Shown here piece by piece: positions 29,681-31,206 of a DNA stretch of 64,000 nucleotides. The notes below the pieces were generated by a model. That model ran no database searches. It had not been told where the DNA came from and was given only the letters and a program-made list of their open reading frames with translations. The translations under genes and the position numbers were made by a program. The stretch is from positions 372,001-436,000 of the forward strand of contig NW_020847372.1 in NCBI RefSeq assembly GCF_003704095.1, read 5' to 3'. The DNA comes from Pocillopora damicornis (lineage: Eukaryota). How positions within the stretch are numbered: the stretch's first letter is position 1; each line of letters opens with the position of its first letter.

Positions 29681-31206
29681 ATGATTTGTGATCTGTGCAA
29701 GACCAGAAAACTGCGGAGAGAATTTCCCTCAGATACTGTGACAGATACATGTGATCATGCGCCTTTGCATTGTCTCAGGGTAAGTTAAAGGATTTTGCCC
29801 GCGGTGTGTATACAATTTTCATACTCTCAAGAATTCGCGGGGTTATTGTCAGTATCTGAGCAACTGCGCGCCTACCCCTCCCTTAGGATATCTTACGATA
29901 TCTTTCAATAGTATACGGATGTAGTTCTCCAACAATATTACAAAAGTAATAGTTAAGAAATTAAAGGAAGCTTGTGGCTACCGTTAGTATTGAAAATCGA
30001 ATCCACGAAACCATAGTAACGGTGCATTGTTTGATTTTATCTTTTCTATTTCTTGTAATTTTTTTTATTATCATTTTCAATGCAAGGTTCTAGTGTGTTT
30101 CTGGATTCCGACAACCTGACCGCAAAATCCAATATCTGATTTTCTTGTACCTAAACAGTGTGTCACAAAGTATGTTGAAAAACATCAGAGGTGTTCTCAG
30201 TGTCCTCAAGAGGTAAAAACCAGTAATCCACGGTACCGTGAGTACTTGGAGACCCTGGAGAACTTGTTCCCAAAATACACTGCGCCCACTGCCACGACTG
30301 AAAATGAGCCGTCTACTTCACTGGTTGGTAACGAGACAATCTCTGTTGTCATGTTGGGCGGAGACAGTACAGTAGTGGCCTATAAACCTGGCATGACAAT
30401 CCAAGACCTGAAGAAATTTGTGCAGAACCGGCTCGGACCAGCTCCACTAAAACAGCGGCTGTTGTACAAAGAAAAAGAGCTTAAGGTAAAGGGAGAATGT
30501 ATTTATTGTAATTTGATCATGGTCTTTCACTCTCTCACAAATACTGAAGAAAGTTGTGCAAAAGTGAGAATATCGAGGCATTTAATATCTTGTGTTTCAG
30601 ACTGACTTAGGTACAAAACTGGCCACCTTACAAGATTACGCTATACAGCCGTTCAGCACCCTACACCTCATTGTTGTGTTGTACGAGATTAACCAGTCCC
30701 TTGACCATGCAATTTTTGACCTGTTTTGGGGGTATCCCTCTAGAGGGTGCGACTATCTAGATGCGTCAGTTCTTATCTACAGTGGATCAGCTCTTCAAGG
30801 CATAGTTGATTACAGTAGTCGTGGTTTTATCGGTGTTTCACATTCTGGTGATGTAATGGATCACAAGAAGCGCATTGGTCACCATACCATAAGTGTACAG
30901 CTGAAGTCTTTGCCTAGCAACATCAACAAGTTATTTTTCACCCTCAGTGCATGGAATTCCCCAAACATTTCAAAATATAAAAATCCCAGTCTGCGTTTTT
31001 TCGATGCCAAGGAGCCTAACAAACAGCTCTGCAGTGATCAGATGGGACATGCCGCATACTCTCAGGCCATCATCATGTGCAGTTTGTCAAAAATTGACGG
31101 AATATGGAAAGTTTTCAGTTTGCGCACACTGTCTGCTGGAAATGCAAATAATTATTCTCCACTGCAGCAGACAATCGGTGGCATAATAACTCAAGGACTG
31201 TGTTAA
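29681..31206 (+). CDS. RING finger - ubiquitin-like - TerD domain protein, ~343 aa, 3 coding exons
   Basis: Exons 29681-29779, 30159-30485, 30601-31206, all phase 0, GT-AG. Spliced N-terminus MICDLC-x17-CDH-x4-CLRC-x10-CSQC fits a C3HC4 RING. Ubl: MTIQDLKKFV...QRLLYKEKELK...TLQDYAIQPFSTLHLIV. TerD-like: LFW..DYLDASV..VSHSGD..ISVQLKSLP..LFFTLS..IWKV. AATAAA near 31539. Confidence 0.85.

What the first reader, a model, noticed from the sequence alone, without database searches (positions are those of the whole stretch)
29681..31206. RING-Ubl-TerD fusion: a bacterial-type stress/anti-phage domain wired to the ubiquitin system in an animal
Seen: splicing three phase-0 exons gives RING (split by intron 29780-30158, so missed by the ORF track) + ubiquitin-like domain (ends LIVVLY, no di-Gly, so not conjugatable) + TerD-like domain with LDAS and HSGD motifs. 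Known: TerD domains are Ca2+-binding beta-sandwiches of bacterial ter operons linked to tellurite, colicin and phage resistance, also seen in Dictyostelium CABP1, and are not a standard animal domain. Several acidic positions after HSGD appear as His/Lys here (HSGDVMDHKKRIGHHTI vs typical HSGDNxTGxGxGDDExI), suggesting altered metal or ligand binding. Inference: an ancient or horizontally acquired sensor domain on an E3 ligase. The spliceosomal introns argue against bacterial contamination.
Basis: partly seen in the sequence, partly recalled or inferred. Interest (0 to 1): 0.85.

Follow-up and report, generated by a model that had tools for sequence, protein, structure and literature searches.

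The report
Coral RING-Ubl-TerD ligase gene beside RNF213
This coral gene really encodes a small protein joining a RING-like zinc finger, a ubiquitin-like domain and a bacterial-type TerD domain; it is an old, widely kept but unstudied animal gene that sits head-to-head with an RNF213-like immune gene and whose sea-anemone counterpart is switched on in antiviral immune cells.

Summary
Three phase-0 coding exons (29681-29779, 30159-30485, 30601-31206) give a 343-aa protein. PolyA RNA contigs from four studies confirm both junctions.

- **Domains.** TerD passes Pfam's cut-off and matches solved TerD folds. The Ubl matches ubiquitin and has no di-Gly tail. The N-terminus has eight invariant Cys/His in RING order, and only RING or U-box proteins are its weak sequence and fold matches.
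- **Origin.** This is not a recent transfer. Same-length orthologues with the same two intron positions occur in cnidarians, molluscs, echinoderms and amphioxus. Lamprey has a same-length homologue. Relatives occur in Glomeromycotina fungi and protists.
- **TerD loop.** The bacterial acidic Ca2+ loop (GDDE) reads GHH across most of this eukaryotic branch.
- **New here.** The gene lies head-to-head with an RNF213-like gene, as in Nematostella and Stylophora. In a 2026 paper's supplementary tables the Nematostella orthologue is poly(I:C)-induced and marks immune cells, with RNF213, but the text does not discuss it.

Best reading: an immune-induced RING E3 or adaptor whose Ubl-TerD module senses a ligand or picks a target. 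Biochemistry is untested. The scan's earlier notes on this cover this window only, not other DNA.

The parts
29150..29270 (+). 5'UTR exon (the 5' limit was not determined; RNA contigs reach at least 29150)
   Evidence: L001 bases 1-70 map to 29201-29270. RNA contigs cover 29150-29270 and join 29268 to 29661 with GT..AG in three runs.
29663..29779 (+). First coding exon. The CDS starts at ATG 29681 and encodes residues 1-33, the first five Zn-ligand candidates of the RING-like finger (C3, C6, C24, H26, C31) plus invariant H30.
   Evidence: Translation; RNA joints; invariant columns in the 21-sequence alignment A1.
30159..30485 (+). Second coding exon, residues 34-142: the rest of the RING-like finger (C34, C45, C48), helix 57-69, a disordered linker at about 72-90, and the first two thirds of the Ubl.
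   Evidence: Translation; Pfam ubiquitin on residues 62-109 of the exon; AF2 model with pLDDT below 50 only at residues 72-90.
30601..31206 (+). Third coding exon, residues 143-343 plus the TAA stop: the end of the Ubl (to about 30684) and the TerD domain (about 30691-31203).
   Evidence: Translation; Pfam TerD 30.1 bits; Foldseek matches to TerD structures; profile match to 3ibz and 2kxt.
30841..30891 (+). HSGD...GHH loop, the counterpart of the bacterial acidic loop HTGDN.TGEG.GDDE
   Evidence: Residue-by-residue alignment to 3ibz and 2kxt. GHH is invariant in A1 and common among the 150 cluster representatives.
31225..31901 (.). 677-bp dispersed repeat inserted in the 3'UTR; not part of the mature mRNA seen in public runs
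   Evidence: All four RNA runs skip 31224 to 31902 with non-canonical TT..AG ends. The stretch gives 78 matching places from about 40 candidate loci in this genome.
31902..32577 (+). Remainder of the 3'UTR
   Evidence: L001 and the RNA contigs continue here.
27622..29149 (.). Divergent intergenic region shared with the RNF213-like gene, carrying five TTCNNNGAA (GAS-type) sites at 28313-28978
   Evidence: Five sites against about 1.0 expected from the window average. The first coding exon of the RNF213-like gene lies at 27292-27621 on the minus strand.
6081..27621 (-). Head-to-head neighbour: an RNF213-like giant AAA+ protein gene (a 4282-aa single ORF at 6081-18929, further exons at 19411-21147 and 27292-27621)
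   Evidence: phmmer to solved RNF213 structures, E about 1e-133. Pfam finds AAA, AAA_5 and AAA_7 and no RING. N-terminal exons mapped with Montipora and Nematostella homologues.

Best explanation
**What it is.** The locus is the single-copy coral orthologue of an old eukaryotic gene family that encodes a protein of about 345 aa with no signal peptide noted and no secretory or membrane domain detected. The protein has four parts:
- an N-terminal C3HC4-type RING-like zinc finger, with a family-specific KL(S/R)xEFP loop and an unusual 4-residue gap between the His ligand and the next Cys;
- a disordered linker of about 20 residues;
- a ubiquitin-like domain that cannot be conjugated;
- a divergent TerD beta-sandwich fused directly to the Ubl, in which the acidic Ca2+-loop residues of bacterial TerD (GDDE) are replaced by Gly-His-His.

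**Shown here.** The gene model, its transcription and splicing, the Ubl and TerD folds, the wide distribution with conserved introns, and the conserved head-to-head pairing with an RNF213-like gene in Hexacorallia. [quoted passage not shown]

**Inferred.** The protein is an immune- or stress-induced RING E3 ligase, or an E3 adaptor. The RING recruits an E2. The Ubl-TerD unit is the conserved core of the family, and other members carry other N-terminal domains in front of it. This unit would bind a ligand (a transition metal or a nucleotide-like small molecule, not Ca2+ in the bacterial manner) or a target, and so gate or aim ubiquitylation. The gene is probably co-regulated with the RNF213-like neighbour from the shared 1.5-kb divergent region.
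For: **Gene model and expression.** (RNA joints in three or four of four independent polyA studies).

**TerD.** Pfam scores 30.1 bits against a cut-off of 25.3 on the exon and 28.7-41.2 bits in the five full-length homologues scanned. Foldseek matches 3ibz, 2qng, 2kxt and 2qz7 at E 4e-9 to 7e-7 with TM 0.72-0.77. The family profile matches 3ibz at 4.8e-7 and 2kxt at 2.6e-5.

**Ubl.** Pfam scores 32.6 bits against 25.4. The profile matches ubiquitin at about 1e-11. TM to ubiquitin is 0.85-0.91 at 36% identity.

**RING-like finger.**
- C3, C6, C24, H26, H30, C31, C34, C45 and C48 are invariant in 21 orthologues.
- The same pattern starts 27 of the 36 cluster representatives of 320-380 aa.
- All eight weak PDB profile hits are RING E3s.
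- The AF2 model of the domain has pLDDT 95. Its best fold matches are RING, RBR-RING1 or U-box domains.
- Distant family members hit Pfam RING models: zf-RING_2 at 6.8e-5 and zf-C3HC4 at 20.6 bits.

**Ubl-TerD as the core.** Of 67 longer representatives, 65 have TerD and 55 have ubiquitin. Alternative N-termini include SDR, VWA and kinase domains.

**Age.** Same-length orthologues occur in Cnidaria, Mollusca, Echinodermata, amphioxus and lamprey. Related proteins occur in Glomeromycotina fungi and protists. Introns after residue 33 and about residue 142 are conserved in six species of four phyla; the middle exon was not recovered in Patiria.

**Immune link.** In Kozlovski et al. 2026 (PMC13319465) the gene Nvec XM_001629759.3, annotated 'ubiquitin/TerD', shares orthogroup OG0001157 with Stylophora XP_022802193, which is P0035. 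It is up in immune cluster 1 (avg log2FC 4.48; 28.6% against 1.5% of cells). It is up after poly(I:C) (log2FC 1.90, adjusted p 9e-26). RNF213 stands next to it in the table at log2FC 4.23.

**Synteny.** An RNF213-like gene lies upstream on the opposite strand in the window, in Nematostella L008 and in Stylophora L009. The NCBI gene numbers are consecutive in both species.
Against: - No Pfam RING model reports the N-terminal domain of this protein or its close orthologues at E up to 1.
- Fold matches for that domain are weak: Foldseek E above 0.3 and Z no higher than 4.3.
- The His-to-Cys spacing is 4 residues, against the usual 2-3.
- Residues that usually contact the E2 are not conserved (my reading of A1). 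These are the hydrophobic residue between the first two Cys, the Pro after the seventh ligand, and a basic residue after the eighth. E3 activity could therefore be absent.
- No ligand of any eukaryotic-type TerD domain is known.
- The immune evidence comes from supplementary tables of one study in another species. In that study's cross-species table the Stylophora orthogroup member shown (XP_022802179, not the direct orthologue) went down after cGAMP (log2FC -1.17).
- The excess of GAS motifs is modest here (5 against 1.0) and weak or absent in Stylophora and Nematostella.
- RNF213 adjacency was not found within 10 kb in amphioxus, octocoral or sea star.
Confidence: 0.6

Rival explanations
1. 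The protein is a non-catalytic adaptor or scaffold. The Cys/His finger is a structural or protein-binding zinc module, the Ubl docks on proteasome or UBD proteins (or on an E2 backside), and TerD binds cargo. Ubiquitylation is then done by another ligase, for example the RNF213-like neighbour.
For: Pfam RING models do not detect the finger. The His-Cys spacing is unusual and E2-contact positions are not conserved. The Ubl keeps the L8/I44/V70-type hydrophobic positions as Leu/Leu/Ile (my reading of the alignment to ubiquitin). Other family members replace the finger with unrelated domains while keeping Ubl-TerD.
Against: The eight ligands stand in RING order. Every weak sequence hit and nearly all the top fold matches are RING or U-box E3s. 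Several distant members pass or nearly pass Pfam RING models.
Confidence: 0.2
2. It is a housekeeping or abiotic-stress E3 tied to ion or metal homeostasis (Ca2+, Zn2+ or similar), as the name TerD suggests. Its expression in immune cells would be incidental.
For: Bacterial TerD binds Ca2+ (title of PDB entry 2kxt). The loop here gains two invariant His, typical transition-metal ligands. The gene is expressed in untreated polyA libraries from several coral studies.
Against: The Nematostella orthologue is detected in only 1.5% of non-immune cells against 28.6% of immune-cluster cells, and it rises after poly(I:C). The conserved pairing with RNF213-like, an immune effector in that study, also argues against this.
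Confidence: 0.15
3. It is a recent horizontal transfer from bacteria, bacterial contamination, or a gene-model artefact.
For: TerD is mainly a bacterial family. In the control search, two of 14 well-known genomes carry it, both bacterial (Bacillus subtilis, Deinococcus radiodurans).
Against: Spliced polyA transcripts exist. Orthologues with identical intron positions occur in four phyla. All 150 nearest cluster representatives checked lack the bacterial GDDE loop, and most carry the G-x-H/Q type instead. The gene has animal neighbours on both sides.
Confidence: 0.01

Closest known systems
Bacterial TerD/TerE/TerZ proteins (Pfam PF02342; structures 2kxt, 3ibz, 2qz7, 2qng)
   Same: Same beta-sandwich fold (TM 0.72-0.77). 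Shared LDAS and H(S/T)GD motifs, and a Pfam score above the cut-off.
   Different: The acidic loop GDN.TGEG.GDDE reads GDVMDD....GHHT. One Asp of the D-x-D-L-D stretch is deleted. The domain is fused behind a Ubl and a RING-like finger. There is no ter operon. It is a spliced animal gene.
Dictyostelium CABP1-type TerD proteins (from my own knowledge, not examined here)
   Same: A eukaryotic protein with TerD domains, reported to bind cAMP. This would be a precedent for nucleotide binding by TerD in eukaryotes.
   Different: No RING or Ubl.
UHRF1 and RNF146 (ligand-reading RING E3s; from my own knowledge. The RNF146 RING-WWE structure 4qpl appears among the fold matches)
   Same: A RING combined with a domain that reads a ligand (hemimethylated DNA; iso-ADP-ribose) and, in UHRF1, a Ubl that helps engage the E2. 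This is the working model proposed here.
   Different: The reader domains are unrelated (SRA/TTD/PHD and WWE, against TerD). The domain order differs. No sequence relationship exists beyond the RING and Ubl folds.
Parkin and HOIL-1L (RBR ligases with a Ubl)
   Same: Ubl plus a RING1-like finger. RBR RING1 domains (HOIL-1L, ARIH2, HHARI, RNF144A, HOIP) are among the best fold matches.
   Different: No IBR or RING2 and no catalytic Cys module, so it is not an RBR ligase.
RNF213 (mysterin)
   Same: A conserved divergent neighbour and, in Nematostella, a co-marker of immune cells. Both are ubiquitin-system proteins.
   Different: The two proteins are unrelated. The coral RNF213-like ORF has no Pfam-detectable RING. 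Its C-terminal 1500 aa give no sequence match to solved RNF213.

Membership tests
TerD (PF02342) | Score above Pfam's gathering cut-off | tested here: met
   30.1 bits against 25.3 on exon 3. The five full-length homologues scanned score 28.7-41.2 bits. 65 of 67 longer representatives match.
TerD (PF02342) | TerD beta-sandwich fold | tested here: met
   The AF2 model (mean pLDDT 83) matches 3ibz, 2qng, 2kxt and 2qz7 at E 4e-9 to 7e-7 with TM 0.72-0.77.
TerD (PF02342) | Acidic Ca2+-binding loop (GDN.TGEG.GDDE) | tested here: not met
   The aligned loop reads GDVMDH/D....GHHT. GHH is invariant in 21 orthologues and common in the 150 representatives. This defines a separate eukaryotic branch and does not exclude it from the fold family.
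TerD (PF02342) | Ter operon context (TerC, TerB, TelA and others) | tested here: not met
   This is a spliced animal gene. Its neighbours are an RNF213-like gene and a TPP-enzyme gene.
RING finger E3 (C3HC4) | Eight Zn ligands in the order C-x2-C-x(9-39)-C-x(1-3)-H-x(2-3)-C-x2-C-x(4-48)-C-x2-C | tested here: inconclusive
   Observed: C-x2-C-x17-C-x-H-x4-C-x2-C-x10-C-x2-C. All ligands are invariant, but the His-Cys gap is 4 and an extra invariant His (H30) precedes C31.
RING finger E3 (C3HC4) | Match to a curated RING profile | tested here: not met
   No Pfam RING family at E up to 1 for exon 1, P0002 or four orthologues. Only distant members hit: zf-C3HC4 20.6 bits against cut-off 21, zf-RING_2 6.8e-5, zf-C3HC4_3 twice. 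The PDB profile search finds only RING E3s, at E 0.07-3.
RING finger E3 (C3HC4) | Cross-brace RING fold | tested here: inconclusive
   The domain model has pLDDT 95. The best Foldseek and VIA-align rows are RING, U-box or RBR-RING1 domains, but at E above 0.3 and Z no higher than 4.3. I could not read the coordinates, so Zn geometry was not checked.
RING finger E3 (C3HC4) | E2 binding and ubiquitin-transfer activity | not testable with these tools
   No suitable E2 was available by reference. Of the two intronless E2-like genes in this genome, one lacks the catalytic Cys and the other looks like a NEDD8-type E2.
Ubiquitin-like domain (PF00240), integral type | Profile match and beta-grasp fold | tested here: met
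   32.6 bits against 25.4 in P0002. Profile against ubiquitin chains about 1e-11. TM 0.85-0.91 at 36% identity.
Conjugatable ubiquitin-like modifier | Free C-terminal di-Gly | tested here: not met
   The ubiquitin LRLRGG position reads VVLYEI and continues into TerD.
RBR ligase | IBR and RING2 with a catalytic Cys after RING1 | tested here: not met
   Only a linker, the Ubl and TerD follow the finger.

The most novel reading that the evidence does not exclude
RING-Ubl-TerD and the RNF213-like ATPase form an ancestral two-gene antiviral ubiquitylation module, transcribed divergently from one control region. The small protein would supply a RING in trans to an RNF213-like partner in which no RING is detectable. 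Its TerD domain, inherited from the bacterial Ter stress and anti-phage toolkit, would sense a small-molecule or metal signal of infection and switch the module on.
Probability: 0.12. Interest if true: 0.85.

Novelty: new variant of a known kind. Interest (0 to 1): 0.62.

Why it matters
Several animal innate-immune parts (cGAS-STING, viperin, gasdermins, TIR) trace back to bacterial anti-phage systems. TerD belongs to the bacterial Ter stress and phage-resistance system, and no function is known for it in animals.

This work shows that a TerD branch with a rebuilt metal loop has been fixed behind a Ubl and a RING-like finger since before cnidarians and bilaterians split. In Hexacorallia the gene sits head-to-head with an RNF213-like gene. 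The sea-anemone orthologue is a poly(I:C)-induced immune-cell marker.

The protein is small, single-copy and easy to express. It offers a direct experimental way to ask what eukaryotic TerD domains bind and whether they feed into ubiquitin signalling in early-branching animal immunity. It may also bear on coral disease and stress responses. The family appears absent from the jawed-vertebrate, insect and nematode entries returned here, which would explain why it has been overlooked.

Tried and rejected
- **Literature.** Searches for TerD with RING, ubiquitin, cnidarians or eukaryotes, and for the NCBI gene and protein accessions, found no paper that discusses this architecture. The key comparative paper on Ter systems (Anantharaman et al. 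2012, PMC4104200) is not held. I therefore cannot exclude that it mentions the eukaryotic fusion.
- **Single-sequence PDB search.** phmmer of the TerD part against PDB gave only E 0.43 to 3ibz. A small family profile was needed.
- **NCBIfam.** No hit for exon 3.
- **Paralogues.** Only one TerD locus was found in this genome.
- **RNF213 adjacency outside Hexacorallia.** It was not confirmed:
  - Amphioxus has consecutive gene numbers in one annotation, but there is no RNF213-like match within 10 kb in B. floridae.
  - The abalone upstream gene is a 2481-aa protein with faint AAA_5, AAA and AAA_7 hits on the opposite strand. Its N-terminal DNA gave no tblastn match.
  - The octocoral and sea-star flanks show other genes.
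- **ISRE-like motifs.** Not enriched in the divergent region.
- **RNF213-like E3 module.** The middle and C-terminal parts give no sequence match to solved RNF213, so I could not place a RING-equivalent region.
- **Complex prediction.** I did not use it. No catalytically competent UBE2D-type E2 was available by reference, and a blind cut of the RNF213-like protein would have been guesswork.
- **Cyclic-dinucleotide link.** The cGAS-like gene 16 kb downstream tempted a link to TerD. A TPP-enzyme gene lies between them and nothing supports coupling.
- **Joined exons.** The joined-exon protein of the window itself was never built or searched. Exons were searched by reference, and P0002 and L001 served for whole-length work.
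Full report
**1. The observation**

All are in phase 0, and both introns have GT..AG ends. The first intron separates ...HCLR from CVTK..., so it lies between two zinc-ligand candidates.

Two natural sequences served for whole-length work:
- The database holds a natural 343-aa protein, P0002, about 95% identical, that reads across both junctions exactly.
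- It is encoded without interruption on an assembled 1801-nt Logan contig (L001). That contig maps onto the window as 29201-29270, 29657-29779, 30158-30485 and 30596-31226, followed by 3'UTR pieces.

Twelve public RNA runs hold more than half of the sampled words of the stretch. I laid contigs from four polyA or oligo-dT RNA studies on it:
- The joints 29268/29661 (three runs), 29778/30158 (three runs) and 30483/30599 (all four) all have GT..AG ends.
- A fourth skip, 31224 to 31902 with TT..AG ends, appears in all four runs. It is not an intron. The skipped 677 bp is a dispersed repeat with 78 matching places from about 40 candidate loci in this genome. It is a transposon-like insertion in the 3'UTR of the assembled haplotype.

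The gene is single-copy in this 234-Mb assembly.

**2. The domains**

*TerD.*
- Exon 3 alone passes Pfam's TerD cut-off (30.1 against 25.3 bits). The five full-length homologues scanned score 28.7-41.2 bits.
- An AlphaFold2 model of P0002, built on a 21-sequence alignment, has mean pLDDT 83. Only the linker at residues 72-90 is disordered.
- Foldseek puts the solved TerD structures first: 3ibz, 2qng, 2kxt and 2qz7, at E 4e-9 to 7e-7 and TM 0.72-0.77.
- A six-sequence profile of the TerD part finds 3ibz at 4.8e-7 and 2kxt at 2.6e-5.

*Ubl.* The model matches ubiquitin at TM 0.85-0.91 and 36% identity. The profile matches ubiquitin chains at about 1e-11. The ubiquitin tail LRLRGG reads VVLYEI and runs straight into TerD. 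This is an integral Ubl, not a modifier.

*RING-like finger.* Support here is weaker.
- C3, C6, C24, H26, H30, C31, C34, C45 and C48 are invariant in 21 orthologues.
- The spacing is C-x2-C-x17-C-x-H-x4-C-x2-C-x10-C-x2-C. This is RING order, but with a 4-residue gap between His and Cys where 2-3 is usual.
- No Pfam RING model reports it.
- A small profile finds only RING E3s in PDB (COP1, RNF4, PCGF5, the EHV-1 RING), at E 0.07-3. The alignments place a 2-residue insertion after the His.
- The domain model has pLDDT 95. Its best matches are almost all RING, U-box or RBR-RING1 domains, but with Foldseek E above 0.3 and Z no higher than 4.3.
- More distant family members do hit Pfam RING models: zf-RING_2 at 6.8e-5, zf-C3HC4 at 20.6 bits, and zf-C3HC4_3 twice. 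They align in the same columns.

I accept it as a divergent RING-type finger. Its E2-contact positions are not well conserved, so catalytic competence is open.

**3. The TerD loop**

Aligned residue by residue, the bacterial HTGDN(I/R)TGEG(E/D)GDDE(Q/S)(I/L) corresponds here to HSGDVMDHKKRIGHHTI.
- The two His are invariant in 21 orthologues. They are the commonest state among the 150 nearest 50%-identity cluster representatives. None of those representatives shows the bacterial GDDE.
- The Lys residues are a local variation. Most orthologues have DD or DN there.

This is therefore a distinct eukaryotic TerD branch with a rebuilt site. Aravind's group has proposed that TerD domains recognise specialised nucleotide derivatives (PMC7159879; PMC7824862). 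The paired His suggest a transition metal or a phosphate-bearing ligand. This is inference only.

**4. Distribution and age**

- The exhaustive search found 607 cluster representatives at E below 1e-3 and 338 below 1e-10.
- Named full-length members of 341-349 aa come from stony corals, sea anemones, octocorals, abalone, bivalves, brittle star, feather star, sea stars and amphioxus. There is one vertebrate, the lamprey.
- Related Ubl-TerD proteins, many with the same N-terminal finger, occur in Glomeromycotina fungi and marine protists.
- No jawed vertebrate, arthropod or nematode appeared among the named hits. This is not proof of absence.
- Coral and amphioxus are 60-62% identical over the TerD exon.
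- The introns after residue 33 and after about residue 142 are at the same places in Nematostella, Stylophora, Dendronephthya, Branchiostoma, Patiria and Haliotis. In Patiria the middle exon was not recovered, so its boundaries are known from one side each.

Recent horizontal transfer and contamination are excluded. Among 67 longer representatives, 65 carry TerD and 55 carry a Ubl. The N-terminus can instead be a short-chain dehydrogenase, a VWA domain or a kinase. The conserved unit is Ubl-TerD, and the RING-like finger is its commonest partner.

**5. Context and expression**

- *The neighbour in the window.* Upstream on the opposite strand lies a giant gene. Its 4282-aa ORF (6081-18929) matches solved RNF213 at about 1e-133 over the AAA core. 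It shows no Pfam RING. Its further exons lie at 19411-21147 and 27292-27621; they were mapped with Nematostella and Montipora homologues.
- *The shared region.* The two genes are head-to-head, with about 1.5 kb between them. That region holds five TTCNNNGAA sites against about 1.0 expected. The excess is modest and not clearly repeated in other species.
- *Conservation of the pairing.* The same arrangement is present in Nematostella (L008: RNF213-like N-terminus at 2961 to 2 on the minus strand, TerD gene from 10001) and in Stylophora (L009). NCBI gene numbers are consecutive in both. Outside Hexacorallia I could not confirm it.
- *Published expression data.* The supplementary tables of Kozlovski et al. 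2026 (PMC13319465) list Nematostella XM_001629759.3, annotated only as 'ubiquitin/TerD'. Their OrthoFinder table puts it in one orthogroup with Stylophora XP_022802193, which is P0035, the orthologue found here.
  - It is enriched in immune cluster 1 (avg log2FC 4.48; 28.6% against 1.5% of cells).
  - It is induced by poly(I:C) (log2FC 1.90, adjusted p 9e-26).
  - RNF213 (XM_001629741.3) stands beside it at log2FC 4.23.
  - The main text names RNF213 as an induced effector and never mentions TerD.

**6. Mechanism**

*Shown:* an expressed, spliced, ancient gene with Ubl and TerD folds and a RING-type finger; a conserved divergent pairing with an RNF213-like gene in Hexacorallia; immune-cell expression and poly(I:C) induction of the sea-anemone orthologue.

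*Inferred (about 0.6 overall):*
- It is an immune- or stress-induced RING E3 or E3 adaptor.
- Ubl-TerD binds a ligand or target and gates or aims ubiquitylation, in the manner of UHRF1 or RNF146.
- It is co-regulated with the RNF213-like gene.

*Rivals:* a non-catalytic adaptor (0.2); a metal or ion-homeostasis E3 with incidental immune expression (0.15); transfer or artefact (about 0.01).

The boldest reading the data allow is a two-gene module. In it the small protein lends a RING to an RNF213-like partner that lacks a detectable one. I give it about 0.12.

**7. Novelty**

Databases already hold the family under automatic names. One paper's supplement lists the Nematostella gene. I found no paper in the held library that describes the architecture, the RING, the altered loop or the pairing with RNF213. 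One relevant 2012 paper could not be read.

I class it as a new variant of a known kind: a ligand-domain RING E3 and a eukaryotic branch of TerD. It is of real but not extreme interest.

Noticed in passing
window 31225-31901: A 677-bp dispersed repeat (78 matching places from about 40 candidate loci in this genome, some 98-99% identical over the first 244 bp) sits in the 3'UTR. RNA contigs from four studies lack it (skip with TT..AG ends). This looks like an insertion polymorphism of a non-autonomous element, not an intron.
   Followed up: partly
window 6081-27621 (-): An RNF213-like gene with a 4282-aa single-exon ORF. It matches solved RNF213 only over the AAA core (E about 1e-133). Pfam finds no RING, and the C-terminal 1500 aa give no sequence match to solved RNF213. 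The first coding exon is at 27292-27621.
   Followed up: partly
window 28313-28978: Five TTCNNNGAA (GAS-type) sites lie in the 1.5-kb divergent region between the RNF213-like and RING-Ubl-TerD genes, against about 1.0 expected from the window average. The matching regions of Stylophora (4 against 1.4) and Nematostella (4 against 2.9) show little or no excess.
   Followed up: partly
window 22267-22728 (+): A 153-aa ORF with a weak GIY-YIG match (20.6 bits, below the cut-off of 22.6) lies inside the large intron of the RNF213-like gene. It may be a remnant of a mobile element.
   Followed up: no
window 34845-39483 (-): Exons of a thiamine-pyrophosphate enzyme (TPP_enzyme_C 35.9 bits, TPP_enzyme_N 40.8 bits). 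By eye it resembles phosphonopyruvate or sulfopyruvate decarboxylases. It lies between the TerD gene and the cGAS-like gene.
   Followed up: partly
window 47723-49294 (+): A 523-aa ORF with Mab-21 nucleotidyltransferase and Mab-21_C domains (a cGAS-like receptor), 16 kb downstream. No evidence links it to the TerD gene.
   Followed up: partly
window 54592-55803 (-): A complete kinesin motor domain (394 bits) in a single 403-aa ORF.
   Followed up: no
L001 against window 29201-31226: The Logan contig L001 is 99-100% identical to the window in the 5'UTR exon and the first two coding exons but only 93.8% in the last one. Other RNA contigs match the window's last exon without differences. L001 may be a chimera of two alleles or of two closely related corals.
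   Followed up: no
L012 10001-16087 (Patiria miniata): Two tandem 341-aa Ubl-TerD genes on the same strand: a local duplication in a sea star.
   Followed up: no
L014 1465-1986 (-) (G000:C2329): An intronless E2-like gene. The catalytic Cys of the HPN...C motif reads Gly, so it is probably an inactive UEV-like retrocopy.
   Followed up: no
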